Shown one piece after another: positions 3,942 to 58,326 of a stretch of DNA of 64,000 nucleotides (the first letter of the stretch is position 1; every line of letters starts with the position of its first letter). Under the pieces are notes generated by a model. The model saw only the letters and a list, made by a program, of their open reading frames with translations, made no database searches and had not been told where the DNA came from. Where the stretch lies: positions 195,420 to 259,419 of IMG/VR virus record IMGVR_UViG_3300013094_000017; one strand, 5' to 3'. The translations under genes and the position numbers were made by a program.

Positions 3942-3955
3942 CATTAAATAAACAT

Positions 3956-5545
3956 ATGGCAAGTAAATCATTAGACGGTAACCTAGTAAAGAAAGCACAC
4001 TCTACTCAGAAGTATACCAATCAACAAATTGAAGACCTTCTAAAGTGTAGCGATCCTAGTACGGGTCCGGCATATTTTCTAGCAAACTTTTTCTTTATAC
4101 AGCATCCTACTAAAGGTAAGATCTCGTATAAAGCATTCCAATATCAGGAAGAATTATTAGAAAGCTATCACTCACATAGATTCAGTGTAAACATGCTAGG
4201 TCGTCAGATGGGTAAAACGACCACTGCCGTGGGATATCTCTTATGGTATGCTATGTTTGTTGACAACAGCACTATCTTAATTGCCGCACACAAATACACA
4301 GGTGCTAAAGAAATTATGCAACGCTTACGCTACGCATATGAAACTTGCCCAGATCATATTCGATGCGGTGTTACAAGTTACAATAAAGAATCAATTGAAT
4401 TTGACAACGGTAGCCGCATAGTAGCACAGACAACAACAGAAACAACAGGTCGTGGTATGTCACTATCACTACTATACTGTGATGAGTTTGCGTTCGTTCC
4501 ACCTAACGTAGCTTCTGAGTTTTGGACTTCAATATCTCCTACACTAGCCACAGGTGGTAAGGCTATTATTACAAGTACTCCAAACAGTGATGAAGATCAA
4601 TTTGCACAGATTTGGAATGAAGCTAATAAGCGATTTGACGAATACGGTAACGAAACTGAAGTAGGACGTAACGGCTTTGCTCCTTACATGGCTATTTGGA
4701 ATCAGCATCCAGATCGCGATGAAAAATGGAAAGCAGAAGAAATGTCGCGTGTGGGCGAAGAACGTTTCCGCCGTGAACATAATTGCGAATTCTTAATCTT
4801 CGACGAAACCTTGGTTAACGCTATTAGCCTTTCTGATATGGAAGGCAGAGAACCTATTATGAAAATGGGGCAAGCACGTTGGTACAAGAAAATCAATCCT
4901 GCTAGCACATACATTGTATCATTAGATCCTAGCCTGGGCACAGGTGGAGATTATGCTGCTATTGAGATCTTAGAAGTACCTAGTATGGAACAAGTAGGTG
5001 AGTGGCATCATAATATGACACCCGTACAAGCACAAGCCCGTATACTACGAGACCTATTAAAGTATATCGAAGATCAATGTTCCTTACAGGGTGTTACCCC
5101 GAGCATTTATTATTCTATCGAAAACAATACAGTAGGCGAAGCTGCCTTGGTTGCTATTAATGAATTAGGTGAAGAATCATACCCCGGCATGTTCTTAAGC
5201 GAGCCGATTAAGAAAGGACACGTTCGTCGTTTTCGTAAAGGATTTAACACAACACATTCGGCTAAAATCAATGCCTGTGCCAAACTAAAACAACTAATCG
5301 AATCACGCCAGCTTAAGGTGTACAGTAAGACCTTAATTAGCGAACTCAAAACATTTGTGGCTGCAGGTATTACCTACAAAGCCAAAACAGGACAGCACGA
5401 CGACTTAGTTTCAAGCCTGTTGCTGGCCATGCGTATGATATTAATACTGCAAGATTGGGATCCAAGCATCTATGAAAAGATGCGAGATCATACAGGGTTA
5501 GAGGAACACGATCTTCCTATGCCTATCTATATCAGCTCTTACTAA
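3956..5545 (+). CDS. terL: terminase large subunit (T4 gp17-like)
   Basis: GRQMGKTT Walker A, LLYCDEFAF Walker B, ITSTPN motif, nuclease DPSLG ... HDDLV. Confidence 0.96.
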   Translation: MASKSLDGNLVKKAHSTQKYTNQQIEDLLKCSDPSTGPAYFLANFFFIQHPTKGKISYKAFQYQEELLESYHSHRFSVNMLGRQMGKTTTAVGYLLWYAMFVDNSTILIAAHKYTGAKEIMQRLRYAYETCPDHIRCGVTSYNKESIEFDNGSRIVAQTTTETTGRGMSLSLLYCDEFAFVPPNVASEFWTSISPTLATGGKAIITSTPNSDEDQFAQIWNEANKRFDEYGNETEVGRNGFAPYMAIWNQHPDRDEKWKAEEMSRVGEERFRREHNCEFLIFDETLVNAISLSDMEGREPIMKMGQARWYKKINPASTYIVSLDPSLGTGGDYAAIEILEVPSMEQVGEWHHNMTPVQAQARILRDLLKYIEDQCSLQGVTPSIYYSIENNTVGEAALVAINELGEESYPGMFLSEPIKKGHVRRFRKGFNTTHSAKINACAKLKQLIESRQLKVYSKTLISELKTFVAAGITYKAKTGQHDDLVSSLLLAMRMILILQDWDPSIYEKMRDHTGLEEHDLPMPIYISSY

Positions 5546-5554
5546 ATATACATT

Positions 5555-7525
5555 ATGGACGCTATCAATTTAATATCACAAGATTTATTCGACAAGGTGC
5601 GTAGCCGCTATTCTAACCTAGAAATGGGTGACGAAGATGGCAACGTAACGTCAGATCCTCGCGAAGCACGCTTTTTTGACTTTGATTACACTGTTGAAGG
5701 TAACAATATAGGCCGTGTTAGTATTTCAATCAACGAGCGCGGATCACTTAAAGTATTCTACGGACAAGGTATCTTAGAAGGTACTGATCCAATAACACAA
5801 GAAATGTGGTTTGATTTCTTAAGAGAAATGCGATTATTTGCCAAACGTAGATTAATGCGTTTTGATACACGCGATATTACCAAGTCCAATTTAGATAAAA
5901 ACGATTTTCAATACCTAGCAAACACAGGGTCAAAGGAAGAGAACATGTCAGAAAGCAAAATGTACGGTAGCTCAAAAAGCAGTTACCTCCCACTAGAAAA
6001 AACACGCCTAATTATCCGTCACAACAAAGCAGTTGACGAAGAACAACGTGGATCACGTAGCCGCAACATCAACGCATTATACGTTGAAAATGCCGAAGGC
6101 GAGCGTTTCAAATATCCATATATTCATCTAGCAGGTGCCAAAGCCATGCAACGCCATGTGGCCAACGGCGGTCGTCCGTACGATGAGTGTGGCAATGCTA
6201 TTATTAAAATGAGTGAACAGATTGCTCAGTTAAATGCTTTCAAACGTCACGTTGGTAAACATGATAGCATGCACAATGAAGCAAACGATATCATGGAAAA
6301 AGCCAGCATGAAGCTAGAACACCTACGTGGGCAGATCAATGCTTTATGCAAACAAGGACACTACGAAAGTTGGAAAGAAAGTTATATTCCAGAAGAAGGT
6401 GGCGAGATTGGCAACATTGATCAAGCAACTATGGAAAACTACAAGAGCAAATTTACAGTTAGTACATTTGCTGAAGACCTAGCACAGTACTTCCCACTTA
6501 TACACTCTATTATGCAAGAAGCAGGTACAGTTGATTTAGATGACTATGTAGGCGAAGCTAAAGAAGAATATTGCGATAGTTGCGATAAAGTTATTAGCAA
6601 ATGCACCTGCGATGAAGACGACCTAGACGAGCATGTAGGATTTGATGCATTTGAATCATGGGCTAACGCAGTAACTGAAGGCAAACTAACAGATGACGAA
6701 ATTGCTAATTTGAAAGATTTGATCAGTGGCCAAGACTTTACTCTAGGAGTAGACGGTACTAATGCTATTGAATCATTACAGGATATCGGTATTGATGATC
6801 CTGATCTACTCGCAGCATTGGCAGAATTAGCCAACGTAAATTCAGAAGCAGATCCAAAACCAACTATTGGCGCATGGTTAAGTAAATTCGATCCAGATGC
6901 TGCTCACGCATTAGGATTAGAACATGAACAGTCTGCTGCCCCTGCTCCGGAAGAAGCACCAGCTGAAGAAGAAGGCTATGAAGATCATATGGCCACAAAC
7001 AAATTTGCACATTATAATAAAATGAAAACAGCAGGTGCAAAACCAAAAGAGCCAAATTTAAGTGTGGGTCAAAAACTTAAGAGTATTGTTAAAGGTGCTC
7101 AAGCATGGGTTAACAATAAACCAGATAGCGACAGTGATTTGGATCTTGGTGAAGAAGATGAAATCGGTGGCGAAATGCCACAAGAAGAAGTTACTCTACA
7201 AGATATTGCCGAAATGGTTAAGAGCTTCTATGATAGAGAAACTAAGAAGTTTCCACTAGGCAAAACCGGTGTTGTTACTAAAGTACGTAAAGAGATGGGC
7301 GACAATGCTGCCGAATTAGCAGAACGTTTAGTGGACCATTTAGAAGATACCTGCGATGAAGAGCAACAAAACGATATGGCACTTGAACCAAACGATAGTC
7401 AAAGCCCAATACACGGCGGAGAACCACGCAGCCCAGAAACAGATGACAGAGGTTGGTTTGGTCACGACGAGGTAGAACAAGAAGCATTTGAAGATATTCT
7501 ACGTTTATCAGGCATCAAAAAATAA
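5555..7525 (+). CDS. large hypothetical protein, probably virion-associated
   Basis: 656 aa, acidic C-terminal half ending EDILRLSGIKK; late promoter TAAATA 6 nt before ATG. Confidence 0.55.
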   Translation: MDAINLISQDLFDKVRSRYSNLEMGDEDGNVTSDPREARFFDFDYTVEGNNIGRVSISINERGSLKVFYGQGILEGTDPITQEMWFDFLREMRLFAKRRLMRFDTRDITKSNLDKNDFQYLANTGSKEENMSESKMYGSSKSSYLPLEKTRLIIRHNKAVDEEQRGSRSRNINALYVENAEGERFKYPYIHLAGAKAMQRHVANGGRPYDECGNAIIKMSEQIAQLNAFKRHVGKHDSMHNEANDIMEKASMKLEHLRGQINALCKQGHYESWKESYIPEEGGEIGNIDQATMENYKSKFTVSTFAEDLAQYFPLIHSIMQEAGTVDLDDYVGEAKEEYCDSCDKVISKCTCDEDDLDEHVGFDAFESWANAVTEGKLTDDEIANLKDLISGQDFTLGVDGTNAIESLQDIGIDDPDLLAALAELANVNSEADPKPTIGAWLSKFDPDAAHALGLEHEQSAAPAPEEAPAEEEGYEDHMATNKFAHYNKMKTAGAKPKEPNLSVGQKLKSIVKGAQAWVNNKPDSDSDLDLGEEDEIGGEMPQEEVTLQDIAEMVKSFYDRETKKFPLGKTGVVTKVRKEMGDNAAELAERLVDHLEDTCDEEQQNDMALEPNDSQSPIHGGEPRSPETDDRGWFGHDEVEQEAFEDILRLSGIKK

Positions 7526-7549
7526 CCGAAAATAATTGTCAATTAACCA

Positions 7550-7579
7550 TTGACATGATAAATAAAGCTGTGTTATAGT
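7550..7579 (+). promoter_or_regulatory. nested sigma70-type (TTGACA...TATAGT) and late (TAAATA) promoters for the gp32-uvsX operon
   Basis: TTGACA 7550-7555, TAAATA 7559-7564, TATAGT 7574-7579. Confidence 0.6.
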
Positions 7580-16996: not shown

Positions 16997-17016
16997 TGAT
17001 CGCCATAAATACACAT

Positions 17017-17853
17017 ATGAAATTACCAGTCTATTTATATACCAACCTATTCGAAGTAATACTAGATTTGGACAACAACAATAGGATTAACAACGTTATG
17101 TATCAACGCGAGCTAAAATTACAAAAAGGACTGAAGAATACAGTACAGCTCCAGTTCAAAAATAGTGACCAAAAACTGTTAAATATCTCCTCAAATCAAT
17201 TCGTTTTCACTCTATTTGACACCGTAAATCAACGAAATCTGATCGAAAAGGATGTAGAAATTTTAGACGATGGTACTACCCTAGCTTTGCGTGGATTAGG
17301 TCAAGTTACATTAACGGAAAGTGATTTAGAAGGTTGCGAAAGTGTATATTATAGTGCTGCTATTAAAGCATTAGACAGTGACGGAAGTTATGTTCCTACG
17401 TATGCTAACACCTATTACGGCGTTGGTGCTACTGTAGAAGTGCGTCACGATATATTTCCTGTGCTACTACCTAGCCAAGAAGTTAATAACTTCGATGTGT
17501 ATTTCAACGCAGATCAAAATGCACAGCGGTACGAATACTACAGTGGCAACCTAAACGGGCATCCAGAGTTCAAATCAAACGTAGCATTGCACACAGTGGC
17601 CACATACATGACCAAATATAAAGGACAGGTCATTATCGAAGGTACCTTAGAAAACGATCCAGCTACATTTGGTAATTATGCTGTTATCAGCACCAAAACA
17701 TATAATGGCGCTTCGGGTATCGATTACACAAACTTTAACGGATTATTTTCAAAGATACGTATCCGTTACATACCAGCAAAGAATCCAGTAACACAATTAA
17801 ACAATGATACCGTATATGCAGGAACGGTTGACAGAGTGCTCTATAGAAGTTAA
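17017..17853 (+). CDS. late, probably virion structural protein
   Basis: beta-rich ORF; TAAATA-N5-ATG at 17006-17019. Confidence 0.5.
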   Translation: MKLPVYLYTNLFEVILDLDNNNRINNVMYQRELKLQKGLKNTVQLQFKNSDQKLLNISSNQFVFTLFDTVNQRNLIEKDVEILDDGTTLALRGLGQVTLTESDLEGCESVYYSAAIKALDSDGSYVPTYANTYYGVGATVEVRHDIFPVLLPSQEVNNFDVYFNADQNAQRYEYYSGNLNGHPEFKSNVALHTVATYMTKYKGQVIIEGTLENDPATFGNYAVISTKTYNGASGIDYTNFNGLFSKIRIRYIPAKNPVTQLNNDTVYAGTVDRVLYRS

Positions 17854-17879: not shown

Positions 17880-17945
17880 TAAATAAGAATGTAGTTCGCG
17901 GGCGTCGGAACCCCAACTACTTTAACATTATTAAGGAATGTCAAC
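17880..17945 (+). promoter_or_regulatory. late promoter plus conserved 5' hairpin (copy 1)
   Basis: TAAATA-N5-GTAGTT-CGC-GGG-loop-CCC-C-AACTAC-TTTAA...AAGGA...GTG. Confidence 0.75.
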
Positions 17946-18704
17946 GTGATTATTTACCCTTCATCAAGAGTATTACCGTATGTTTACATCGGAATACATA
18001 AAATAACTGGTCATATCTATATCGGATCAAGAACTGCAGAGAATTTAAAATTACCGTCTCATTTAGATTTATTTAGATACCGAACTTCTTCTAAAACAGT
18101 TAGACCCGAGTTTGATCAATATAATTGGACGATTGTAGCAGAGTTTTTCAATGGGAACGACGCATATGATTTCGAACAAGAATTAATTTATTGTAATTGG
18201 CACAACCTATTACTTATGAACAAAAATTGTCATTACAATAGCAAAAAAAGATTTAAAGCCGTTAAAGGAATACCTAAACCGGAAGGATTTGGACAAATAG
18301 TTCGTGATAGAATGATAGGTAAATGCAAAGGCCCACAATCTAAAGATCATATAGAGAAAAGAGCAAATTCTCGCAGAGGGAAAACCGCGACCGATGAACA
18401 AAAACAAAAATATAGTTTAGCCCAACAAAAGAGGTACAGTACAACAGCAGATTCTGAAATAACTAGAAAAAGAAAAAGCGATTCACATAACGGGGTCTAT
18501 GAAATAAAATCCCCAGATGGTAGAGTTTGGATAACTGATGTTGGATTAAAAGAGTTTGCTACGATACATCAGGATGAATTAAAGATTTCATATTGGCAGT
18601 TGTTCAATGCTTATAGAAAGTGCTATAATAATACTAGCACCATCCGTAAAAGAAAAGATAACAACAATTGGCAGGTAACTAGAATTGACAAATTTGATAA
18701 CTGA
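17946..18704 (+). CDS. GIY-YIG-like homing endonuclease with NUMOD3 region
   Basis: PYVY...TGHIYIGSR; S-x-D-H-I-E-K-R NUMOD3-like segment; free-standing upstream of primase. Confidence 0.75.
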   Translation: MIIYPSSRVLPYVYIGIHKITGHIYIGSRTAENLKLPSHLDLFRYRTSSKTVRPEFDQYNWTIVAEFFNGNDAYDFEQELIYCNWHNLLLMNKNCHYNSKKRFKAVKGIPKPEGFGQIVRDRMIGKCKGPQSKDHIEKRANSRRGKTATDEQKQKYSLAQQKRYSTTADSEITRKRKSDSHNGVYEIKSPDGRVWITDVGLKEFATIHQDELKISYWQLFNAYRKCYNNTSTIRKRKDNNNWQVTRIDKFDN

Positions 18705-19689: not shown

Positions 19690-21136
19690 TACAGATTACA
19701 GCTATGATATACAGAAACTATACTTGGAGATGTTCTTAAGCGACGCAGAAACGTTTGTTCGCTGTCAAAGCATCTTTGAGCCCGAAAACTTTGATCAAAA
19801 GTTACGTGAGACAGCCAAGTTTATGACTGAGTATGTAGATCAATACAAAGTTATGCCAGAGGCAAGTATTATCAATGCTAGCTGTAAGATGACATTAGAA
19901 CCAGCAGTATTACCTAAACAAAACTACGAGTGGTTACTAACAGAGTTTGAAAACTTTAGTCGTCACAAGGGACTTGAGCGTGCTATTCTTAAATCAGCTG
20001 ACCTGCTTGAAAAGGGCGATTACGGTCCTGTAGAAAAGCTAGTTAAGGATGCTATACAGATTAGCCTAACCAAAGACATGGGCACAGACTACTGGCATGA
20101 CCCTAGAGCACGCCTAATGAAGCTCAAAGACAATGCAGGACAGGTCAGTACAGGTTGGCCCACTGTAGATCGTAAACTATACGGCGGCTTTAAACGCGGC
20201 GAATTAAACATTTGGTGTGCAGGTTCAGGGGGTGGTAAGAGTTTATTCCTTGCTAACTTGGGCGTTAACTTTGCACTTGCTGGACTCAATGTCATTTACT
20301 TTACATTCGAGTTGAGCGAAGAACTAGTGGGCATGCGTGTGGACAGTATGGTTACAGGTGTAGCCACACGTGATGTATTCAAGAGCTTAGATGATGTGGA
20401 AATGAAGGTTAAATTGACGGGTCGGAAGGCAGGAGGAATGCAGATAAAATACATGCCTTCTGGGAAGAATTGTAATGATTTGAGGTCGTATTTGAAGGAA
20501 TATGAAGTCAAAACAGGCAAAAAACCTGACATATTATTAGTGGACTACTTAGACCTTATGATGCCTCTATCGGTGAAGGTTAGTCCAAGTGATTTATTTG
20601 TTAAAGACAAGTATGTAAGTGAAGAACTACGTAACCTTGCCATGGAAAGTCAAACAGTGGTTGTAACTGCGGCACAGTTGAATCGTGCGGCTGTAGAAGA
20701 GATTGAGTTTGATCACAGTCATATTAGTGGCGGGTTAAGTAAGATTCAAACAGCAGATAACGTAATTGGTATCTTTACTAGCCGTGCTATGAAAGAACGC
20801 GGTCGCTATCAAATACAGTTTATGAAAACACGTAGTTCAAGCGGTGTTGGACAGAAAGTAGATCTAGAGTTTAATGTAGACAGTCTACGCATCAGCGACC
20901 TAGGTGAAGAAGAAGGTGAGCAATCCTTTAATCAACAACGTACTGGCACTACAGCTAATATTGTAAATCAGTTTAAAAAGACCAGCACAGTAACAGCCAA
21001 CAACGTAGATACCGAAACAGGTGAGATACGCAGTGCTGATCCAGCAGATGGTGTAGCAGTGGGCAAGGTACGAGGATCAGCTGGTAGTAGCAAGATTCGC
21101 GAGATGCTGGCTAATCTAAACTCAGAAAAAGATTAA
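19682..21136 (+). CDS. gp41: replicative DnaB-like helicase (T4 gp41-like)
   Basis: AGSGGGKS, LLVDYLDLM, TAAQLNR, KTR motifs. Confidence 0.94.
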   Translation: MTNTDYSYDIQKLYLEMFLSDAETFVRCQSIFEPENFDQKLRETAKFMTEYVDQYKVMPEASIINASCKMTLEPAVLPKQNYEWLLTEFENFSRHKGLERAILKSADLLEKGDYGPVEKLVKDAIQISLTKDMGTDYWHDPRARLMKLKDNAGQVSTGWPTVDRKLYGGFKRGELNIWCAGSGGGKSLFLANLGVNFALAGLNVIYFTFELSEELVGMRVDSMVTGVATRDVFKSLDDVEMKVKLTGRKAGGMQIKYMPSGKNCNDLRSYLKEYEVKTGKKPDILLVDYLDLMMPLSVKVSPSDLFVKDKYVSEELRNLAMESQTVVVTAAQLNRAAVEEIEFDHSHISGGLSKIQTADNVIGIFTSRAMKERGRYQIQFMKTRSSSGVGQKVDLEFNVDSLRISDLGEEEGEQSFNQQRTGTTANIVNQFKKTSTVTANNVDTETGEIRSADPADGVAVGKVRGSAGSSKIREMLANLNSEKD

Positions 21137-21144
21137 ATAGTCAT

Positions 21145-21828
21145 ATGACTAAGTTTGCCCCACCTATTGAACCACATAAAGAACTAAATCCTGCTCTATG
21201 GGATGGTAACACCATTAAACCCGAAGTACAGGTTGCACTGCTACGCATTGCCAAGGAGTTCTTTAAGTTCCTTGAGATCAATACCAAGATCAACGATATA
21301 GTTATTTCGGGCAGCCAAGCAAACTATAACTACACCAGTCATAGTGATATTGACCTACACTTAATAGTTCCAATGGAAAATATCCAATGTGACGAACCAA
21401 TTGAAGCACTGTTTGATACCAAACGCAAACTATGGAAGGCCAAACATACTATTGATATCTACGGTATTCCAGTAGAGTGTTACGCAGAAGATCGTGCCAA
21501 ACCGGCTGTTAGCTCCAGCTACAGTCTAATACATAATAAGTGGATTAAAGAACCAGACAGCAGTCGTGTAGAATATAACAGATCACAAGTAGAACACTCT
21601 GTCAAGGTGTGGACTACATTGATCGATCACGCAGTTGGTACTCAAGACCTAACAGAGCTACAACGACTAACAGAACTACTAATGACCTATCGTAAAGTTG
21701 GACTGGCCCAGCAGGGTGAGTTTGGTCCAGCTAATCTTACGTTTAAGAGCCTACGTAATGCAGGCACCCTTGAGCGCCTACATACTGCATTGAATCAAAC
21801 TCGAGACAACGACCTTAGCTTGGATTAG
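21145..21828 (+). CDS. nucleotidyltransferase (Pol beta superfamily)
   Basis: GSQANY...SDIDLH signature and third acidic residue in VECY. Confidence 0.8.
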   Translation: MTKFAPPIEPHKELNPALWDGNTIKPEVQVALLRIAKEFFKFLEINTKINDIVISGSQANYNYTSHSDIDLHLIVPMENIQCDEPIEALFDTKRKLWKAKHTIDIYGIPVECYAEDRAKPAVSSSYSLIHNKWIKEPDSSRVEYNRSQVEHSVKVWTTLIDHAVGTQDLTELQRLTELLMTYRKVGLAQQGEFGPANLTFKSLRNAGTLERLHTALNQTRDNDLSLD

Positions 21829-22487: not shown

Positions 22488-23264
22488 TTAAAAGTAAAAT
22501 ATATTTGGACGCCATGGATAGTTAACTTCCAAGCGTTCTAGTGTTTCGTTCTTGCGTGTTTCTATCCACATGGTCTTGCCCAGAGCCAGCCCCACAGCGC
22601 AGGGGCTACTCATACTGGTGATCAGCATTTCGCTGCCCTGTATGACCTGTGCCATGTTATAGAATGTGGGCGTAACATGGTGAGGTACAGAAACATTCAT
22701 AGTGGAGCAGAACCAATCGTGATCCTCTTTGAGTCCAATGAACACTGCTTGATCAGCTAGCCCCCAATCCAACCAACTGCGCCATTGAGGGCTTTCCACT
22801 GCATTGCCTTCTTGATAGCGAGGGCCCCGGAAGATCACATAGGGACGGCCGGGAATCTTAATGGGCTCGCGACATTCCATGTAGGGTTCAACCTGTAGGG
22901 GTATGCGATACTGATCTAGGTCCATGCCCAGAGCTCGAGCATATTGATTGGCAAAGTTACGGGGAAATACACCAGTTTCATGATGTCGAGCCGCTTCGTC
23001 TAGATCATAGTCCACTGGTTCACCCTGCCAGACGGTAAAGCCCGAGATATAAGGTTGATGCAGAATAAAATCCCGCATGCTGTCAAAGTCCTCAATACGC
23101 ATGCGACCTCGATGCACACCAACATCACCCCAACCTAGTTTTTCTCGCACCATCTGCTCTAGATTGTGTAGTTTAAGATATAAGTGTCCCCCACCTAGAG
23201 CTCGCACCACGCTCAGAGAGTTGAACACATCCCCTGTAGTACCTGAATGGCTGAATGTTTTCAT
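22488..23264 (-). CDS. GT-B glycosyltransferase, GT9/heptosyltransferase-like
   Basis: HSGTTGDVFNSL N-terminal loop; AQVIQGSEMLITSMSSP..VGLALG C-terminal pattern. Confidence 0.55.
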   Translation of the reverse strand: MKTFSHSGTTGDVFNSLSVVRALGGGHLYLKLHNLEQMVREKLGWGDVGVHRGRMRIEDFDSMRDFILHQPYISGFTVWQGEPVDYDLDEAARHHETGVFPRNFANQYARALGMDLDQYRIPLQVEPYMECREPIKIPGRPYVIFRGPRYQEGNAVESPQWRSWLDWGLADQAVFIGLKEDHDWFCSTMNVSVPHHVTPTFYNMAQVIQGSEMLITSMSSPCAVGLALGKTMWIETRKNETLERLEVNYPWRPNIFYF

Positions 23265-23377
23265 ATAGACTATTTAAACGGGGGTCAGGACAGGCTGCCA
23301 AGATCCGAGCGCGAAGCGCCTAGCGCGAAAAAATTCTAGGTCTTTAACTGCGCAGTTAACTCCAGCTGGATCAGTCT

Positions 23378-23590
23378 CTAGCCCAGGTCCTGTCCCTGGT
23401 TTAACAGCTCTATAGCATCAACTACCTGATCGTGGTCCACATAGTAACGTATATGCTGCTGTCCTCGGGGATCCTGCCAACGTAAGAGCCACGTGGTGCC
23501 AATCTCAGCCACAGCAAATACATAGCCTAATTGATTACGTATGGGTCCTATACGCCAGTGTGTGACAGCGTGAAAATCGTGATCGAACAT
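23378..23590 (-). CDS. hypothetical protein
   Basis: ORF track; TAAATA a few nt upstream on the minus strand. Confidence 0.45.
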   Translation of the reverse strand: MFDHDFHAVTHWRIGPIRNQLGYVFAVAEIGTTWLLRWQDPRGQQHIRYYVDHDQVVDAIELLNQGQDLG

Positions 23591-23667
23591 ATGGTTATTT
23601 AACTCGAGTTGACAGCAGGACTAAGATAGTGTATAATATAAGCTCACAATCTGATATAAGGTGTTAT

Positions 23668-25032: not shown

Positions 25033-25096
25033 TTTGTTTCTCCGTTGTGTTAGTGTATACGTAGTATAATATCAAACCTGCCAGCTGTCAACTACT

Positions 25097-38297: not shown

Positions 38298-38375
38298 GTG
38301 TGAGATCCCAAAGTATCCTTATGGGACGATTTATCTATCCGCTGCGCAGTACTATGTACATCGCCAATCTCACAC
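38298..38375 (-). ncRNA. candidate 78-nt structured late ncRNA upstream of the split tRNA
   Basis: TATAAATA (38381-38388, minus) then 5 nt to GTGTGAGA, which pairs with terminal TCTCACAC; internal CGAT/ATCG and TCCCA/TGGGA stems. Confidence 0.45.
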
Positions 38376-38427
38376 TTCTTTATTTATAACTCAAATGATG
38401 TTATACTACACTATATGACTTATAGTA

Positions 38428-48800: not shown

Positions 48801-48864
48801 TCATCTACGCATCTATCTGCGCAGTGATAAACAATTATCTATGTTCCACCTCAAGTGGGGTTAA
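45846..48864 (+). other. tandem run of eleven [KR]W-tail family genes (45846, 46076, 46395, 46589, 46810, 46997, 47317, 47595, 47894, 48287, 48595)
   Basis: ends: FLLRWMV, FMLKWG, WKLKWV, FLLRWS, FIMKWS, IALKFS, WMLRWAN, FLMKFDV, FILTWVR, LILRWGKE, FHLKWG. Confidence 0.75.
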
Positions 48865-48872
48865 ATAGTCGT

Positions 48873-49061
48873 ATGAGCAACTACAACAAAGTACAGAATC
48901 AGATCAAACTGTTAGAAATCAAATTGAATAAATTTAGATTATACGAGCAAGAGATAAGATCAACAGATCAATGGAATACGAGACGTATTGATGATTGTGT
49001 TAAATCTCAGGAGAAATTAGTTGAGATGATCAAGTACTGGCGTGGTAAATTGCCTAGCTAG
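48873..49061 (+). CDS. late coiled-coil small protein
   Basis: TAAATA-N5-ATG at 48862-48875. Confidence 0.55.
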   Translation: MSNYNKVQNQIKLLEIKLNKFRLYEQEIRSTDQWNTRRIDDCVKSQEKLVEMIKYWRGKLPS

Positions 49062-50828: not shown

Positions 50829-50897
50829 TATAAATATGTGTAGTTCGCGGGATTGGCGTCCCCAACTACTCTAACAGTTTACAAGGAACTATCAGCA
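50829..50897 (+). promoter_or_regulatory. late promoter plus conserved 5' hairpin (copy 2)
   Basis: TATAAATA-N3-GTAGTT-CGC-GGGA-TTGGCG-TCCC-C-AACTAC-TCTAA...AAGGA...TCAGC-A-ATG. Confidence 0.78.
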
Positions 50898-51689
50898 ATG
50901 ACTATTTACTACCTATATATCAAGACCCACAAAATAACTGGACTTAAATATCTCGGGCAAACATCTGCATCTGATCCGCATAAGTATCCTGGCTCAGGAG
51001 TTGATTGGAAAAATCATCTTAAAGAACACGGATATAACTATACTACTGAAATTCTAAGAGAATGTCAATCAAAAGACGAACGTAGAGAATGGGGATTATA
51101 TTATAGTAATTTATGGAATGTAGTAGAAAGTGAAGAATGGGCTAATCGTATTCCAGAAACTGGCGGCGGTGGCAATATCACCCCAGAAGGTTGTGCAAAA
51201 GCAGTTAATACTAGAAAACAAAAAGGAAGTTATAAACGAAATGAATCTGCTATTGCAAAAGGATTAGAAACAAGATTACTAAAATACGGAACAACAAATA
51301 CCTCAACTCCTGCTGGTATAGTCAAAGGACTTGAAACTAAAAAACGAAATGGAACATCTGGTAATAATTTAACTCCTGAACGTATTGCTAAATGTTTAGA
51401 GACTAAGAAGAAAAATGGTACAATGAATAGCAATACCCCTGAGTCAATTGCTAAAGGACTTAATACTAAAACAATTAACAGAAATACACCAAATTCACCC
51501 ACGGTAATATCTAAGGCACTTGAAACTCGCCGTCGAAATGGCACCATGAATACATCAACTCCTGAATCGATTGCAAAACGAACAGAAACTCGCAAAAAAC
51601 GCATACAAGAAGGTACAGACGGAGTAATAATGAAGGTAGTTTGTCCACATTGTAATAAAGAAGGCGGGCAATCGATTATGGCACTTTGA
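50898..51689 (+). CDS. GIY-YIG-like endonuclease with tandem repeats; C-terminal zinc finger apparently frameshifted
   Basis: YLYIKTH..TGLKYLGQT...YPGSG; seven TPE-x-IAK-x-LET-K/R repeats; WHFDNCK in another frame 51679-51714. Confidence 0.8.
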   Translation: MTIYYLYIKTHKITGLKYLGQTSASDPHKYPGSGVDWKNHLKEHGYNYTTEILRECQSKDERREWGLYYSNLWNVVESEEWANRIPETGGGGNITPEGCAKAVNTRKQKGSYKRNESAIAKGLETRLLKYGTTNTSTPAGIVKGLETKKRNGTSGNNLTPERIAKCLETKKKNGTMNSNTPESIAKGLNTKTINRNTPNSPTVISKALETRRRNGTMNTSTPESIAKRTETRKKRIQEGTDGVIMKVVCPHCNKEGGQSIMAL

Positions 51690-51827: not shown

Positions 51828-52349
51828 ATGAGAGTATTTTTCTCAAAGATAGCGGCCTTGGTCGTAGCTCTAACAATATGTATGACAGCTAGAGCGAATG
51901 AAGTAACCGACGTGCAGTTAACACGTCAGCTAACATGTTTAGCACAAAACATTTACCATGAAGCAGGCAGTGAAAGTATTCAAGGTAAAGTGGCTGTAGC
52001 ACAAGTGACAATTAACCGTGCCAACAGTGGTAGATTTCCTAGTACCATATGTGGTGTAGTAAATCAAAAGACAGTCGTAGCAGATAAAACAATCTGCCAG
52101 TTCGATTGGGCCTGTGACCCTATTGCTCTAAACCGCAGAATATATAATGCGGCCTATCAAGAGAGTTACAGGGTAGCAGAGTTAGTTCTACTAGGTGGTA
52201 AGAGAGTAGAAGAGCTAGGCGAAAAGACCATGTATTTTCATAATACACAATCTAATCCACACTGGCCATTGCAACGTATTGCCCGCATAGGCAACCACGT
52301 ATTCTATACCAGTGATACAGAAACAAGAAAGGTAGCATATAATAAATAA
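51828..52349 (+). CDS. SleB-like cell wall hydrolase
   Basis: CLAQNIYHEAG, AVAQVTINR, CQFDW, YFHN, IGNHVFY; signal peptide; GGGAGG SD. Confidence 0.9.
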   Translation: MRVFFSKIAALVVALTICMTARANEVTDVQLTRQLTCLAQNIYHEAGSESIQGKVAVAQVTINRANSGRFPSTICGVVNQKTVVADKTICQFDWACDPIALNRRIYNAAYQESYRVAELVLLGGKRVEELGEKTMYFHNTQSNPHWPLQRIARIGNHVFYTSDTETRKVAYNK

Positions 52350-52353
52350 GACT

Positions 52354-53034
52354 ATGAGAGCTAGAGAATTTATTATTGAAAACAAGCGAGGTACACCAGA
52401 GGTTTTCCTAGATATGGATGGTGTCCTTGCTGACTTTTTTGCAGAGTATGCTAACCTAGCAGGAGTGAAAAGCGGTAGCTATCGTGACATTCCTCCAGCT
52501 AAAGCAGATCCAACGCTACAAAAAATGGTGGGCACTGATTTCTTTGCCCGCCTTCCTAAATTTCCAAGTACTGACAGTCTAGTCAGTATGACAGTAAAGA
52601 TGTTTGGACACTATCATATTTGCAGTAGCCCATTACGTGGCGACTTTGAAGGTAGTGAAAAATACAAAAAGATTTGGATCAAACAACATTTGAATCCACA
52701 ACCAGTAGACATCCTTATTACACCAAACAAAGCCAAATATGCAGTACAAGCAGATGGTACTCCAAACATCTTAATTGATGACCGTGGTAGTAACATCAGT
52801 GCTTGGGAAGCCGCAGGCGGAGTTGGTATTAAATATCAAGCAGATGAAGATGGTCTTGATGTAGTATTAGCAGGCTTCAAGCGTGCAGTAGATATCGTCA
52901 AAGGTCGTATGAAACACGAGCCACAGCAACTGACCAGCAAAGATAGATCAAGTGGCAAACTAATTGCCAAGAGTGGCGATGAAGAAGAACATCCAAGTTC
53001 GCCAGCAGATCTAAAGAATAAAGAAGTAGCATAA
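52354..53034 (+). CDS. HAD-family 5'(3')-deoxyribonucleotidase with head-targeting-like leader
   Basis: FLDMDGVLADF, CSSP, K..W, NILIDDR; N-terminus MRAREFIIE. Confidence 0.85.
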   Translation: MRAREFIIENKRGTPEVFLDMDGVLADFFAEYANLAGVKSGSYRDIPPAKADPTLQKMVGTDFFARLPKFPSTDSLVSMTVKMFGHYHICSSPLRGDFEGSEKYKKIWIKQHLNPQPVDILITPNKAKYAVQADGTPNILIDDRGSNISAWEAAGGVGIKYQADEDGLDVVLAGFKRAVDIVKGRMKHEPQQLTSKDRSSGKLIAKSGDEEEHPSSPADLKNKEVA

Positions 53035-53047
53035 GGTAAATACTTGT

Positions 53048-53755
53048 ATGAGAGCAAATGAATTAATATCAGAAATGGGTTGGGGCGCAGACAGCCAAAA
53101 AGCAGGCACTGAACAAAATGCCCGTGATTGGGAACATGTTATGGCCAAACATACTAACAGTAGCCCAGAGGTCAAAACAATCTTAAAGATGCTACGCCAA
53201 GGCAATTGGAAAGCAGCCTACGCTGAGAAAGAAGCCCTAGGTAACGGTGGCAAGAGTGTTGACTTTTGGCTAGCACATGCCAAGAAACAAGGCTATACAG
53301 AATCACTTGAAAAACGTCTTGCAGAAGAAATCGATCAAGACGAGTATACCAACGAAGCAGACATGGTGCAGAGTAATTTACACACTATTATCCGTATGGC
53401 AGAAGAATTAAGCAAGATCCTAGAAGTTAACGAAGATATGGCAGAATGGGCTCAAGAAAAGATTGCCGTGGTTAAATCTATGATTGTTACTGTTGGAGAT
53501 TATATCATCAGCCAACATGAACAGGGTAATGTACAACATACAGACGAAGAATTTGAACTAGATGAAAAGACATCACCTAAACTATGCCGCAGTGGTAAAC
53601 GTCTAGGACGTAGCGACTATTCAAGTTGCGTATCACAAGGGTTAAGAGCCCACACATCAAAAGGTAAAGGCCATACAGATGGACATGGCAACTATCTAAA
53701 AGGTAAGAAAGCCAAAAGTACTAGATACGGTGGCGATGTACCTGACTACAGCTAA
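53048..53755 (+). CDS. probable internal head protein
   Basis: MRANELISE leader; several x-x-E cleavage-like sites; TAAATA-N5-ATG. Confidence 0.55.
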   Translation: MRANELISEMGWGADSQKAGTEQNARDWEHVMAKHTNSSPEVKTILKMLRQGNWKAAYAEKEALGNGGKSVDFWLAHAKKQGYTESLEKRLAEEIDQDEYTNEADMVQSNLHTIIRMAEELSKILEVNEDMAEWAQEKIAVVKSMIVTVGDYIISQHEQGNVQHTDEEFELDEKTSPKLCRSGKRLGRSDYSSCVSQGLRAHTSKGKGHTDGHGNYLKGKKAKSTRYGGDVPDYS

Positions 53756-53854
53756 CACAAATAATCAAGCCCATTTAGGGCTTGACTTATATCTGCATCT
53801 ATGCTACTATTATGTTATAAATATCTTTAGTAAACCTTTTCAAGGAGTAAGATA

Positions 53855-54193
53855 ATGAAAAAACTATTAGTAGCTCTAGTATTAACAATGTTCGCAACAT
53901 CAGCAATGGCACATGGATACGGTCGCGGAGGATATTATGGCGGGTACCACGGTGGATACGGTGGCGGTTATGGTTGGGTCGCACCATTAGCAATCGGCGG
54001 GTTGATTGGATATGAATTATCACAACCACGAACAGTCGTAGTTACACCTCCTCCTGTGGTATATCAACAACAACCTATTATCGTACAACAAGCCCCTAGT
54101 GTGTTGCCTCCAGCACCGTACGGTTATCACTACGAAAATATGTTAGATGCTAATTGTAACTGCTATAAAACTGTGTTAGTAGTCAATCAATAA
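53855..54193 (+). CDS. secreted Gly/Tyr/Pro-rich protein
   Basis: signal peptide, [11 protein letters not shown], glycine-zipper, PPPVVYQQ. Confidence 0.65.
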
Positions 54194-54525: not shown

Positions 54526-54770
54526 TGCTATATCAAGCACTGAAACCATATTCTATCCTATTGCAACATGACGAAACTCGCGACCTAGATGCGGGCCTCG
54601 GAATGATGTTGCTTCCCGAAGACAATTCTAAAGTATTTCTACATTGGATGAATGGAGATAAACTCCGTGCCAGCTACACAATGAGCAAGGCCACTAAGGT
54701 CTATGAAACTGTACGTTTAATCAACGCATCGAAACGTGTAATTGAGATTAAAATATTTGATCTTGGTTGA
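54525..54770 (+). CDS. hypothetical protein
   Basis: coupled to erpA. Confidence 0.5.
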   Translation: MLYQALKPYSILLQHDETRDLDAGLGMMLLPEDNSKVFLHWMNGDKLRASYTMSKATKVYETVRLINASKRVIEIKIFDLG

Positions 54771-55452
54771 CACGTTTGAGTTTACAGTTTTCAAAATGCC
54801 AGCGTTTCATATTACATCTGCTACCCGTTTTGTTACAGTAAGGACAAGTAACCTTTATCTGGGAAGGATGAGTTCCGTTCTCCAATTGCTTACGTACAAC
54901 ATCGCCGCCTAATAGATTATGCGTCCCATTTGCTACTCTTTTCAAATTATTTTGTAGCTTATAGTCGCCATTAAGAAATAGATGAGTCCCGTCTGCAATT
55001 CTTTTTTGATTAGTTTTAGATTGCAGTTCTCCGCCAAGGAACGGATGTGTTCCGTTTTCTATTCTTTTCTGATTTGACTTACGTGCTACTTCGCCACCTA
55101 CCCAGGGATGGGTTCCAGATTCTACCCGTCTAAGATTTTCTCTTGTCGCTGATATTGAGTCTACTCCGTCTCCGGTTTCGGGTTTAAGATTAGCCCACAG
55201 TTTCTTTCCTAACTCATCTCTTGCCTCAACAATATCCCATAGATTGCTATAGTAGGTACCTAAGCGTTTTATTTCTTTCTTTGAGTCACATTCGTGTAGT
55301 ATATCGGTGGTGTAATCATTGCCGTGTACCTTGAGATGATCTAACCAATATGATCCGCTCCCTTTATATCTGTGAGGATCCTTTGATTTTGTTTGTCCGA
55401 GATATTTCAATCCGGTTTTATTATGTGTCTTTATGTATAGATAAATAGGCAA
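54748..55452 (-). CDS. GIY-YIG-like endonuclease with GTH repeats and C-terminal zinc finger
   Basis: YLYIKTHNKTGLKYLGQT...YKGSG; five GTH repeats; CPYC...KRWHFENCK. Confidence 0.8.
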   Translation of the reverse strand: MPIYLYIKTHNKTGLKYLGQTKSKDPHRYKGSGSYWLDHLKVHGNDYTTDILHECDSKKEIKRLGTYYSNLWDIVEARDELGKKLWANLKPETGDGVDSISATRENLRRVESGTHPWVGGEVARKSNQKRIENGTHPFLGGELQSKTNQKRIADGTHLFLNGDYKLQNNLKRVANGTHNLLGGDVVRKQLENGTHPSQIKVTCPYCNKTGSRCNMKRWHFENCKLKRVNQDQIF

Positions 55453-55517
55453 GCTGATTGCTCCTTTATAGCATTAGAGTAGTTGGATATCCCCATATCG
55501 CGAACTACATTTATTTA
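55453..55517 (-). promoter_or_regulatory. late promoter plus conserved 5' hairpin (copy 3)
   Basis: minus: TAAATA-AAT-GTAGTT-CGC-GATAT-GGGG-ATATC-C-AACTAC-TCTAA...AAGGAG-CAATCAGC-TTG. Confidence 0.78.
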
Positions 55518-56905: not shown

Positions 56906-56906
56906 G

Positions 56907-57367: not shown

Positions 57368-57389
57368 ACAGGAGCCTTAGCTCCTGTTA
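57368..57389. terminator. hairpin between convergent infA and HNH genes
   Basis: AACAGGAGC-CTTA-GCTCCTGTT. Confidence 0.7.
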
Positions 57390-57391
57390 TG

Positions 57392-57913
57392 TTATACCTC
57401 AAGGCCTAAATACATTGGCCAACTTGGGTGCCGATGATCAAACGGTAATTTCTTACGTTGTTCTACTAATTGGTAGTAGTTTGGTTTGAACGGCACTTTC
57501 TTAGGGTTGATTCGATAATCATTACCTTTATCACTGTTACAATCACCACAGGCACAGGTACAGTTTTCAAACGTACTCTTACCACCTAGGCTTGTAGGCA
57601 GCACGTGATCTAATGTAGCAGTTTTTTGAGTAACATTGATACCGCAGTATTGACAAATAAATCCATCACGTAAGAATACGTTGGCTTTACTAAAGCGAAC
57701 GATGTTCTTCTTTTTCATATATTCTTTCATCATAATAACCGCAGGTACTCGGGTACTCCAGTTTGCACTGTGTACAATCCAATCCTCGTGCCATTCCATT
57801 ACATGAGCTTTATCCAAGACCATATAACGAACAGCTTCCTGCCATGTGATAACACTCAATGGCAGCATTGAAATTGGTGTGCCGTCTGTGTTTAATACTA
57901 ATGTTGATTGCAT
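57392..57913 (-). CDS. HNH endonuclease (McrA/HNH_5-like)
   Basis: VFLRDGFICQYCG...TLDHVLP..GG...NCTCAC..CN..KGN. Confidence 0.9.
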   Translation of the reverse strand: MQSTLVLNTDGTPISMLPLSVITWQEAVRYMVLDKAHVMEWHEDWIVHSANWSTRVPAVIMMKEYMKKKNIVRFSKANVFLRDGFICQYCGINVTQKTATLDHVLPTSLGGKSTFENCTCACGDCNSDKGNDYRINPKKVPFKPNYYQLVEQRKKLPFDHRHPSWPMYLGLEV

Positions 57914-57975
57914 AATATATGTATTTATTTGTTTATAACGCTACTAGTATAACATAGAGTTGGGATTAGAACAAG

Positions 57976-58254
57976 TTAAATTTTGATATCACTATTGACA
58001 GATGTATTCCACATGCGTCTACGTTCTACACCTTTAGACTGTGCAAACTGTTTAGGATTGCAGTTAGAGCATACATGATAGTAGTCATTGCTGACCCTGC
58101 GAGGATCTATCTCTCCTCTAGTTCTTTCAAACCTAGCATTACAATTATCGCAGGTAAAGATCAGCATAGTTAAGGTGCGAGTATAATTGTGTACTACACC
58201 TTGTTTACTGGTGCGTTGGTATTGTTTAACAATCTTCCTAGAGTCGATATACAT
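57976..58254 (-). CDS. small zinc-binding hypothetical protein
   Basis: CDNC...HVCSNC; TAAATA-N5-ATG gives start 58254. Confidence 0.6.
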   Translation of the reverse strand: MYIDSRKIVKQYQRTSKQGVVHNYTRTLTMLIFTCDNCNARFERTRGEIDPRRVSNDYYHVCSNCNPKQFAQSKGVERRRMWNTSVNSDIKI

Positions 58255-58326
58255 AGAATTATTTACATTCGGATTATAAAATATACCGCTAAATATGTAC
58301 AAGAACACCATAGTAGGAATTATACA

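What the first reader, a model, noticed from the sequence alone, without database searches (positions are those of the whole stretch)
3945..58265. Late promoters placed so that +1 is the A of ATG: systematic leaderless mRNAs
Seen: TAAATA sits exactly 5 nt before ATG at 3945 (terL), 17006, 21134, 37588, 48862, 52343, 53037 and 58260-58265 (minus). It sits 6 nt before at 5543 and 23271-23276 (minus), and 8 nt before at 57922-57927 (minus). None of these has a Shine-Dalgarno between box and ATG. Known: the T4 gp55 promoter TATAAATA spans about -13 to -6, so N5 puts +1 on the ATG. The same N5 spacing lands on the first paired base of the hairpins at 17891 and 38375. Inference: this phage expresses many late genes, including terL, as leaderless mRNA, while its early genes all carry a strong SD.
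Basis: partly seen in the sequence, partly recalled or inferred. Interest (0 to 1): 0.82.

Follow-up and report, generated by a model that had tools for sequence, protein, structure and literature searches.

The report
Late promoter boxes fused to start codons
In this uncultured jumbo phage and its relatives, the short late-promoter box TAAATA sits 4-7 bases (mostly 5) before the ATG of many late genes with no ribosome-binding site, so these genes are most likely made from messenger RNAs that begin at the start codon itself.

Summary
TAAATA-N5-ATG occurs 9 times in the window (1.5 expected; 0 of 100 shuffles reach 9). There are two more at N6 and one at N8.

The window is the last 64 kb of a 259-kb IMG/VR contig. 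The phage is a T4-related jumbo phage whose closest cultured relative is Pseudomonas phage PA5oct.

In 950 kb of related contigs the box-to-ATG distance spikes at 4-7 nt. The box and the spacing are kept at orthologous genes (terL, a virion protein, a gene after DnaB) down to 36% protein identity, while the spacer sequence drifts. These starts use ATG only (69 ATG, 0 GTG, 1 TTG). They have a pyrimidine at -1, no Shine-Dalgarno, and weakly structured 5' coding ends. terL's box directly follows an intrinsic terminator.

Best reading: gp55-type late promoters fused to start codons, giving leaderless or 0-2-nt-leader late mRNAs. No RNA 5' ends were available. The gp55-like sigma was found in relatives but not retrieved for this contig. 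"All early genes carry a strong SD" is overstated. This is a new variant of two known things: T4-type late promoters and phage leaderless mRNAs.

The parts
3914..3937 (+). Intrinsic terminator (10-bp stem, then a T-run) ending 7 nt before the terL box.
   Evidence: Top terminator hit. The same hairpin + T-run + box arrangement occurs in about 20 relatives.
3945..3958 (+). TAAATA-N5-ATG of terL (gene 3956-5545).
   Evidence: It is the only start candidate in the first 80 codons. terL identified by PHROG. Conserved in relatives at 59-95% aa identity.
5543..5557 (+). TAAATA-N6-ATG of a 656-aa virion structural protein (5555-7525). The TAA of the box is the terL stop codon.
   Evidence: Orthologs have the box at N4-N6.
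17006..17019 (+). TAAATA-N5-ATG of a virion structural protein (17017-17853; ortholog of PA5oct gp262). It lies in a roughly 20-nt gap to a divergent gene.
   Evidence: All 39 orthologs checked (36-100% aa identity) have the box at N4-N6. PA5oct has TAAATA-N5-ATG at record position 144985.
21134..21147 (+). TAAATA-N5-ATG of gene 21145-21828 (phrog_36119). The TAA of the box is the stop codon of the DnaB-like helicase.
   Evidence: 37 orthologs have the box at N5-N7, one at N9.
23262..23276 (-). TAAATA-N6-ATG of gene 22488-23264 (258 aa, function unknown).
23588..23601 (-). TAAATA-N5-ATG of gene 23378-23590 (70 aa).
37588..37601 (+). TAAATA-N5-ATG of gene 37599-38276 (phrog_23051).
48862..48875 (+). 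TAAATA-N5-ATG of a 62-aa ORF (48873-49061). The TAA of the box is the stop of the upstream ORF.
   Evidence: This small ORF is the weakest case: a GGGG run lies upstream of the box.
52343..52356 (+). TAAATA-N5-ATG of gene 52354-53034 (deoxyribonucleotidase-like).
53037..53050 (+). TAAATA-N5-ATG of gene 53048-53755 (235 aa).
57911..57927 (-). TAAATA-N8-ATG of an HNH endonuclease gene (57392-57913). A leader of at most 3 nt is expected.
58252..58265 (-). TAAATA-N5-ATG of gene 57976-58254 (92 aa). It lies back to back with the plus-strand box at 58290.
58290..58329 (+). Leadered late-promoter-like box, for contrast. TAAATA lies 31 nt before the ATG at 58327 of a 1597-aa protein, with AGGAA in the leader.
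53818..53857 (+). Leadered late-promoter-like box. TAAATA lies 31 nt before the ATG at 53855, with AAGGAG in the leader.
1667..1695 (+). Leadered late-promoter-like box. TAAATA lies 20 nt before the ATG at 1693.
17880..17948 (+). TAAATA, N5, a 5' hairpin (GTAGTT...AACTAC), AAGGA, then the GTG start of a homing endonuclease gene (17946-18704).
50831..50900 (+). Sister cassette of the one at 17880. TAAATA, the same hairpin starting 3 nt after the box, AAGGA, then the ATG at 50898.
55450..55517 (-). Sister cassette. TAAATA, hairpin, AAGGAG, then the TTG start of an intron-type endonuclease gene (54748-55452).
38298..38386 (-). TAAATA, N5, then a structured RNA of about 78 nt closed by a 9-bp stem (GTGTGAGAT / ATCTCACAC). 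No Rfam match.

Best explanation
TAAATA is the core of a T4-type late promoter. That kind of promoter is recognised by a gp55-like phage sigma on the host RNA polymerase core. It has no -35 element, and the box occupies -11 to -6.

In this phage clade the box has been fused to the start codon of about half of the late transcription units. Initiation, 6 nt after the box with about 1 nt of slack, then falls on the A of ATG or 1-2 nt before it. The resulting mRNA has a 5'-terminal AUG and no Shine-Dalgarno. It would be translated by the leaderless route, in which a 70S ribosome, or a 30S subunit with IF2 and fMet-tRNA, binds a 5'-terminal AUG.

A likely consequence follows. The same ORF inside a read-through transcript from an upstream early or middle gene has no ribosome-binding site. 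Translation of these genes would therefore be tied to initiation at the late promoter. The arrangement also saves space: in several cases the TAA of the box is the stop codon of the upstream gene.

Shown: the motif, its spacing, its conservation, ATG-only starts, absence of SD, and the terminator context.
Inferred: that the box is a promoter, the exact +1, the sigma that reads it, and the mode of translation.
For: (1) There is a spike at gap 5 in the window: 9 matches against 1.5 expected.

(2) The same spike appears in two independent sets of related IMG/VR loci. In 383 kb around terL, 60 N5 sites open ORFs of at least 60 aa, against 0-10 at other gaps. In 567 kb around the gene-17017 orthologs, unique sites number N4=8, N5=34, N6=35, N7=14, against 0-2 elsewhere.

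(3) Orthologous conservation of box and spacing with a drifting spacer. This holds for terL in about 20 relatives at 59-95% identity. It holds for gene 17017 in 39 of 39 orthologs down to 36% identity, including cultured PA5oct. It holds for gene 21145 in 37 orthologs.

(4) At N5 the start codon is ATG 69 times, GTG 0 and TTG 1. SD-led genes of the clade do use GTG, for example the sigma gene itself. A requirement for AUG is a known property of leaderless mRNAs.

(5) Position -1 is T 43, C 10, A 4, G 0, followed by A at +1. This is the pyrimidine/purine start-site signature. The spacer is G-poor.

(6) terL's box follows an intrinsic terminator by 7 nt, so little read-through mRNA can feed terL. 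Gene 17017 sits about 20 nt from a divergent gene, which leaves no room for a leader.

(7) The same hexamer also occurs 18-35 nt upstream of SD-led starts and in front of non-coding 5' hairpins. It is about 4-fold depleted inside genes on both strands. That pattern fits a DNA-level signal.

(8) The phage is T4-related: UvsX, UvsY, gp32-like SSB, primase and DnaB-type helicase. PA5oct encodes a 'sigma factor for late transcription' next to gp47/gp46 homologs. Hundreds of IMG/VR relatives do too.

(9) T4 numbering puts TATAAATA at -13 to -6 (PMC2988020).

(10) The first 45 nt of the 12 ORFs fold weakly: median -1.7 against -4.15 kcal/mol, p=0.007.
Against: No transcript 5' ends were available, so the promoter function and the +1 position are inferred.

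The gp55-like sigma gene of this particular contig was not retrieved. The searches were capped at the 80 best loci, and the sigma gene is not in the window.

Only 6 of the 8 T4 consensus positions are conserved; -13 and -12 are free.

The gap varies from 4 to 7 nt among orthologs, and is 8 at one window site. Some transcripts would therefore carry 1-3 extra nucleotides, or the start site must be flexible.

In E. coli-type hosts leaderless translation is usually inefficient, and the host here is unknown.

Three of the ORFs are small (62-92 aa) and their coding status is unverified.
Confidence: 0.75

Rival explanations
1. Stop-start coupling. TAAATA matters because it contains a TAA stop. Ribosomes ending the upstream ORF re-initiate at the ATG a few nt downstream on a polycistronic mRNA, with no SD and no promoter involved.
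For: In 3 of 12 window sites the TAA of the box is the in-frame stop of the upstream gene (5543, 21134, 48862). Two more boxes lie within a few nt of an upstream stop (52343, 53037).
Against: terL's box follows a terminator, not an ORF. Gene 17017, gene 58254 and many orthologs of 21145 face a divergent gene, so there is no upstream ORF on that strand. Coupling needs neither a fixed hexamer beyond TAA nor the 4-7-nt spacing. The same hexamer also precedes non-coding hairpins and SD-led leaders.
Confidence: 0.06
2. An AU-rich translational enhancer. TAAATA at -11 to -6 acts in the RNA as a non-SD ribosome-binding element (for example S1-dependent) on ordinary leadered or polycistronic mRNAs.
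For: The box occupies the position where an SD would normally lie. AU-rich non-SD initiation regions are known in some bacteria (GeneMarkS-2 group B, PMC6028130).
Against: An RNA element would not be depleted on the antisense strand of genes: 11 antisense and 7 sense copies were found where about 70 were expected. It would not sit 18-60 nt upstream of starts that have their own SD. It would not demand ATG to the exclusion of GTG/TTG, nor a pyrimidine at -1. The hexamer is not complementary to the 16S 3' tail (anti-SD duplex energies about 0).
Confidence: 0.06
3. The boxes are real late promoters but serve genes further downstream. They sit next to an ATG only because intergenic space is tiny. 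The adjacent ORF is translated from other transcripts.
For: The genome is about 88% coding with very short intergenic gaps. Late promoters inside operons are common in T4-like phages (general knowledge).
Against: Simple crowding would give a broad distance distribution, not a 4-7-nt spike held over deep divergence. It would not give ATG-only starts or the -1 pyrimidine. With a terminator upstream, terL has no other evident transcript.
Confidence: 0.08
4. Chance or base-composition artefact.
For: TAAATA is a short AT-rich word, and ATG is common.
Against: 0 of 100 and 0 of 300 dinucleotide shuffles reach the observed count. The spike recurs in about 950 kb of related contigs, and 60 of 63 pooled N5 sites open ORFs of at least 60 aa. 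AT-rich PA5oct has many TAAATA copies but no spike.
Confidence: 0.01

Closest known systems
T4-type (gp55/gp33/gp45-dependent) late promoters, TATAAATA at -13 to -6
   Same: The core TAAATA is the same and there is no -35 element. The boxes sit in front of virion and packaging genes on either strand. The phage has T4-like replication and recombination genes. A gp55-like sigma lies next to gp47/gp46 homologs in relatives.
   Different: Only the 6-bp core is conserved; -13 and -12 are free. By general knowledge, T4 late mRNAs carry leaders with an SD. Here about half of the boxes abut the start codon. The broader clade around the sigma gene shows the classical 16-23-nt spacing, with only a minor N5 class.
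Leaderless middle/late mRNAs of Thermus phages phiYS40 and P23-45
   Same: These phages make most middle/late transcripts without a leader, so late translation uses the leaderless route (summarised in PMC3594737).
   Different: They use host sigma-A-type (extended -10) promoters in a host phylum where leaderless mRNAs are the norm (PMC12340547). Here a phage-specific gp55-type box is used. The phage's own early genes rely on GGAG/AAGGA Shine-Dalgarno sites, which implies an SD-using host.
'-10 box adjacent to the ORF' architecture of leaderless genes in Actinobacteria and Deinococcus-Thermus (GeneMarkS-2 group C)
   Same: A promoter -10 element is localised 6-8 nt before the start codon, it replaces the RBS, and SD-led genes coexist in the same genome (PMC6028130; PMC12340547).
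   Different: Those are cellular housekeeping-sigma promoters. Here the arrangement is restricted to the late class of a virus, with a different hexamer and a slightly shorter spacer (mode 5-6).
Lambda cI mRNA from PRM (the classic leaderless mRNA in E. coli)
   Same: The mRNA has a 5'-terminal AUG and is translated without an SD in an SD-using host (general knowledge; cited within).
   Different: It is a single regulatory gene from a sigma-70 promoter, not a genome-wide late-gene strategy.
T4 late-only translation through hairpins that hide the RBS on early read-through transcripts (gene e, soc, I-TevI)
   Same: The proposed outcome is the same: the protein is made only from the transcript that starts at the late promoter (general knowledge; T4 reviews PMC3014915 and PMC2988022 were listed but not read in detail).
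   Different: The means differ. Here there is no RBS at all rather than a masked one.

Membership tests
T4-type late promoter (gp55-dependent) | An A/T-rich box matching TATAAATA about one helical turn upstream of the start site, with no -35 element. | tested here: met
   TAAATA is invariant by construction of the search. There is no conserved -35-like signal in 57 unique sites, and -13/-12 are not conserved. Variation at -13/-12 is known in Aeh1 (PMC2988020).
T4-type late promoter (gp55-dependent) | Located upstream of late (virion, packaging) genes. | tested here: met
   The boxes precede terL, two virion structural proteins, tail tube 2, tail sheath and a 1597-aa protein. PA5oct gp262 was detected in virions by MS according to its annotation.
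T4-type late promoter (gp55-dependent) | The genome encodes a gp55-like sigma (plus gp33 and a gp45 clamp). | tested here: inconclusive
   Not found in the window. Present in PA5oct (gp346), in more than 574 IMG/VR loci, and in 54 of 79 gp46-anchored loci. The window's own contig did not appear in the capped hit lists. gp33 and gp45 were not searched.
T4-type late promoter (gp55-dependent) | Transcription starts about 6 nt downstream of the box, late, and depends on replication. | not testable with these tools
   Needs RNA 5'-end mapping or in vitro transcription.
Leaderless mRNA | The promoter -10-type element lies a few nt (about 5-8) upstream of the start codon. | tested here: met
   The gap mode is 5 in the window, and gaps run 4-7 in relatives.
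Leaderless mRNA | No Shine-Dalgarno upstream of the start. | tested here: met
   Median anti-SD duplex energy is +0.1 kcal/mol for the 12 sites, against -6.1, -3.1 and -4.0 in the other gene classes. The spacer is G-poor.
Leaderless mRNA | AUG start codon required. | tested here: met
   ATG 69, GTG 0, TTG 1 at N5.
Leaderless mRNA | The mapped primary 5' end coincides with the start codon, and translation starts from that end. | not testable with these tools
   No transcriptome or ribosome-profiling data were accessible. The PA5oct paper reports only sigma-70-like promoters.
Translational coupling (stop-start) | An upstream ORF on the same strand ends at or within a few nt of the start. | tested here: not met
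   True for about 5 of 12 sites. False for terL (terminator upstream) and for the divergent pairs at 17006 and 58260.

The most novel reading that the evidence does not exclude
The leaderless late mRNAs are one half of a translational takeover. Late in infection the phage disables Shine-Dalgarno-dependent initiation, so that only 5'-AUG late mRNAs are translated well.

Possible means include a RegB-like cut in the GGAG of its own early leaders and of host mRNAs, or a change to the ribosome or the initiation factors. phiYS40 is reported to shift IF2 and IF3 in this way, and PA5oct carries a ribosomal protein S21 gene.

The contrast in the window is compatible with this but does not show it. GGAG Shine-Dalgarno sites occur in 19 of 37 genes of the early block, against 5 of 49 elsewhere, and the late starts have no SD at all. 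No RegB, S21 or IF homolog was found in the window.
Probability: 0.12. Interest if true: 0.85.

Novelty: new variant of a known kind. Interest (0 to 1): 0.58.

Why it matters
T4-type late transcription is a textbook system in which promoters are followed by ordinary leaders. A whole clade of T4-related jumbo phages that fuses this promoter to the start codon would matter in four ways.

(1) It would show that leaderless translation can be a deliberate, class-specific viral strategy in hosts that otherwise use Shine-Dalgarno sites.

(2) It would give a simple mechanism for tying translation to late transcription.

(3) It would explain why gene callers that expect an RBS mis-start or miss such genes in jumbo-phage metagenomes.

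(4) It would give a compact 14-nt late expression signal that can be tested directly. One site (gp262) is present in the cultured phage PA5oct, for which RNA-seq data already exist.

Tried and rejected
- No DNA-level match of the terL region to any of 50,697 phage records. Only 40-nt chance-like hits inside the SSB gene.
- T4 gp55 and PA5oct S21 were searched by tblastn against the window and the loci. Nothing real was found. A weak gp55 hit (E 0.85) turned out to lie in a tail tube gene.
- Three attempts to fetch the gp55-like sigma gene of the window's own contig returned hundreds of relatives but not this contig, because only the 80 best loci are kept. The queries were the PA5oct sigma, an alignment of 13 sigmas, and the PA5oct gp46 homolog.
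- The PA5oct 'IF-2-like' gp139 is a low-complexity protein with no homolog in the window.
- A Pfam scan of 10 early ORFs for RegB or translation-related domains found nothing above threshold.
- Rfam and ARAGORN found only tRNA-Met. The hairpin RNAs match no family.
- A search for relatives of gene 21145 by its own peptides found only itself. Its orthologs were instead recovered from the flanks of the gene-17017 loci.
- Gene 53048 has only its C-terminal 67 aa conserved elsewhere, so its start could not be compared.
- Literature searches linking T4-type late promoters or PA5oct with leaderless mRNAs found nothing.
- The primary phiYS40 paper is not held.
- A T4 whole-genome control histogram was not run. 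The broad-clade loci and 200 kb of PA5oct served as controls.

Full report
WHAT THE WINDOW IS. The window is the terminal 64 kb of IMG/VR contig IMGVR_UViG_3300013094_000017 (259,419 bp). terL at window position 3956 corresponds to contig position 199,375. The DNA is 41% G+C. It has no DNA-level relative among 50,697 deposited phage genomes. By protein, terL is 55% identical to that of Pseudomonas jumbo phage PA5oct (Arenbergviridae). More distant matches are Atu_ph07/Phosso and the Rak2-like jumbo phages.

Gene order around terL is the same as in PA5oct: structural protein, terL, virion proteins, gp32-like SSB, UvsX, UvsY, helicase, a virion protein, primase, DnaB-type helicase, structural proteins. 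It is therefore a T4-related jumbo phage. Two blocks of small genes (minus strand 24.6-37.4 kb, plus strand 39.7-48.7 kb) look like early regions.

THE OBSERVATION. TAAATA-N5-ATG occurs nine times against 1.54 +/- 1.23 in dinucleotide shuffles (largest 6). Over all gaps from 0 to 30, only gap 5 stands out. N6 sites lie at 5543 and 23271 (minus), and an N8 site at 57922 (minus).

TAAATA itself is rare: 42 copies against about 80 expected. It is concentrated in intergenic DNA: 24 of 42 copies lie in about 12% of the sequence. Of the roughly 23 intergenic boxes with a plausible target:
- 12 abut a start codon (N5-N8);
- 6 lie 18-35 nt upstream of a start;
- 3 lie about 60 nt upstream of homing-endonuclease genes, behind a conserved 5' hairpin.

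For terL and gene 21145 the N5 ATG is the only possible start in the first 80 codons. The 12 starts have essentially no anti-SD complementarity. Their median duplex energy is +0.1 kcal/mol, against -6.1 in the minus-strand early block, -3.1 in the plus-strand block and -4.0 elsewhere.

COMPARATIVE EVIDENCE. This is what turns a motif count into a case.

(a) terL. In about 20 IMG/VR relatives with 59-95% terL identity, terL is preceded by a terminator hairpin, a T-run, TAAATA, five variable bases and ATG. The spacers differ: aacat, ctcat, taatt, atcat, ttcac, aaatt, taggt, ctatt, ctaat. Two lineages (L005/6/25 and L018) and PA5oct have an SD-led terL instead, so the state can switch.

(b) Pooled terL-region loci. 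In 383 kb, 60 N5 sites open ORFs of at least 60 aa, against 0-10 at neighbouring gaps. Secondary peaks occur at 19-22 and 31 nt, the leadered class.

(c) The virion protein at 17017. All 39 orthologs examined, down to 36% identity, have TAAATA 4-6 nt before the ATG. The box lies in a roughly 20-nt gap to a divergently transcribed gene. PA5oct gp262 has TAAATA-cgtgt-ATG.

(d) The gene after DnaB (21145). 37 orthologs have the box at N5-N7 (one at N9). It often lies back to back with a second box that serves the divergent gene at N5.

(e) A second pooled set. In 567 kb, counting unique contexts only, the gaps are N4=8, N5=34, N6=35, N7=14 and N8=4, against 0-2 elsewhere. That is 91 of 437 boxes at N4-N7.

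(f) Controls. 200 kb of PA5oct shows no spike and only the gp262 site. 1.25 Mb of broader-clade loci around the sigma gene shows the classical 16-23-nt spacing with a small N5 class. The systematic use is therefore a trait of the window's sub-clade.

SIGNATURES THAT DISCRIMINATE BETWEEN MECHANISMS.
- Among window plus relatives, the N5 start codon is ATG 69 times, GTG 0 and TTG 1. SD-led genes of the clade do use GTG: the sigma gene itself has TAAATA, an AGGAG leader and a GTG start.
- In 57 unique N5 sites, -1 is T 43, C 10, A 4 and G 0. The spacer is G-poor. Positions -13/-12 are unconserved, and -15 to -23 is T-rich, often because of a terminator tail.
- The first 45 nt of the 12 ORFs fold weakly: median -1.7 against -4.15 kcal/mol, one-sided Mann-Whitney p=0.007.
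- terL's box begins 7 nt after the best-scoring intrinsic terminator of the first 20 kb.
- TAAATA is avoided inside genes on both strands.

AUG-only starts, a pyrimidine at -1 with a purine at +1, an unstructured 5' end, strand-symmetric avoidance, and reuse of the same hexamer before SD-led leaders and non-coding hairpins all fit a promoter whose start site is the start codon. They do not fit a translational element or stop-start coupling.

MECHANISM PROPOSED. The T4 late promoter TATAAATA is numbered -13 to -6 (PMC2988020). TAAATA then spans -11 to -6, and N5 puts +1 on the A of ATG. PA5oct encodes a 'sigma factor for late transcription' beside gp47/gp46 homologs, as T4 does. More than 574 IMG/VR loci encode relatives of it, and 54 of 79 gp46-anchored loci have it adjacent.

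I infer that this sigma directs the host RNA polymerase core to TAAATA, that transcription starts at or 1-2 nt before the ATG, and that the 5'-AUG mRNA is translated by the leaderless pathway. Read-through transcripts would carry the same ORF without any ribosome-binding site. This would restrict translation to late-promoter transcripts. It would also allow very tight packing, since in three cases the TAA of the box is the upstream gene's stop codon. These steps are inference; no RNA data could be consulted.

NOT EVERY LATE GENE IS LEADERLESS. The tail sheath gene, just upstream of the window in the same contig, has a 39-nt leader containing AAGGAG. The neighbouring tail-tube-2 gene has a terminator followed by TAAATA-N5-ATG.

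WHAT IS KNOWN. The following are established.
- T4-type late promoters.
- Leaderless mRNAs in phages: lambda cI, and most middle/late transcripts of Thermus phage phiYS40, with reported shifts in IF2 and IF3 (PMC3594737).
- The '-10 box adjacent to the ORF' architecture, in Deinococcus-Thermus (PMC12340547) and in GeneMarkS-2 group C genomes, where the box lies 6-8 nt from the start (PMC6028130).

I found no paper connecting gp55-type late promoters, PA5oct or other jumbo phages with systematic leaderless late mRNAs. The PA5oct omics paper lists only sigma-70-like promoters. I therefore rate this as a new variant of a known kind: known parts in a combination and on a scale not described.

LIMITS. 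No 5'-end data. The sigma gene of this very contig was not retrieved. The host is unknown. Three of the twelve ORFs are short and unverified. The gap spread of 4-7 nt means some mRNAs may carry 1-2 extra nucleotides. The early-gene SD claim is only partly true. Start coordinates for the comparison classes come from a simple ORF and codon-usage caller.

Noticed in passing
window 17880-17948 (+), 50831-50900 (+), 55450-55517 (-): Three copies of a cassette: TAAATA, a conserved 5' hairpin (GTAGTTCGCG...AACTAC), an AAGGA(G) SD, then a homing-endonuclease-type ORF. It looks like a mobile promoter, leader and HEG unit. The hairpin starts 3 or 5 nt after the box.
   Followed up: partly
window 38298-38386 (-): TAAATA-N5 followed by a structured RNA of about 78 nt closed by a 9-bp stem. 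It has no Rfam match and lies antisense-downstream of gene 37599-38276. It could be a small RNA or a bidirectional terminator.
   Followed up: partly
window minus strand; copies begin at 25055, 25435, 27805, 31310, 32439, 32920, 33183: A conserved leader, CACTAAC(A/G)CAAC followed by GGAGAAACAAA-ATG, is repeated in front of at least 7 early-block genes. GGAG Shine-Dalgarno sites occur in 19 of 37 genes of this block, against 5 of 49 elsewhere. This is reminiscent of the GGAG targets of T4 RegB, but no RegB homolog was found.
   Followed up: partly
whole window: TAAATA is about two-fold depleted overall (42 copies against about 80) and about four-fold depleted inside genes, on both strands. This would be expected if stray late promoters are selected against.
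   Followed up: partly
loci L264, L286, L297, L319 and others (upstream of the sigma gene, near locus position 5000-6000): In many relatives the gp55-like sigma gene itself is preceded by TAAATA, a leader with AGGAG, and a GTG start. This suggests late-promoter (auto-)transcription of the late sigma.
   Followed up: no
loci L212-L221, about 45 nt upstream of the gene-21145 orthologs: Back-to-back divergent boxes (CAT-N5-TATTTA, 6 nt, TAAATA-N6-ATG). Two leaderless-type starts share an intergenic region of about 30 nt.
   Followed up: partly
window 7550-7579 (+): A near-consensus sigma-70-type promoter (TTGACA, 18 nt, TG-n-TATAGT) lies upstream of the gp32-like SSB gene. A TAAATA box (7559) sits inside its spacer, 96 nt before the ATG.
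   Followed up: no
window 37438-37514 (-): A single tRNA-Met (CAT) gene lies between the early block and gene 37599.
   Followed up: no
PA5oct record 170955-171161 (L033) and 241368-241670 (L034): PA5oct encodes a ribosomal protein S21 and a protein annotated 'IF-2-like'. The latter is low-complexity. Neither has a homolog in the window.
   Followed up: yes
window 58327-63120 (+): A 1597-aa protein with no PHROG match is driven by a leadered TAAATA box. Its function is unknown; it is probably a virion protein.
   Followed up: no
window 13110-13826 (-), 17946-18704 (+), 54748-55452 (-), 57392-57913 (-): Four homing/HNH endonuclease genes lie in 64 kb, all with a TAAATA box upstream. This parallels the late-promoter control of homing endonucleases in T4.
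   Followed up: partly
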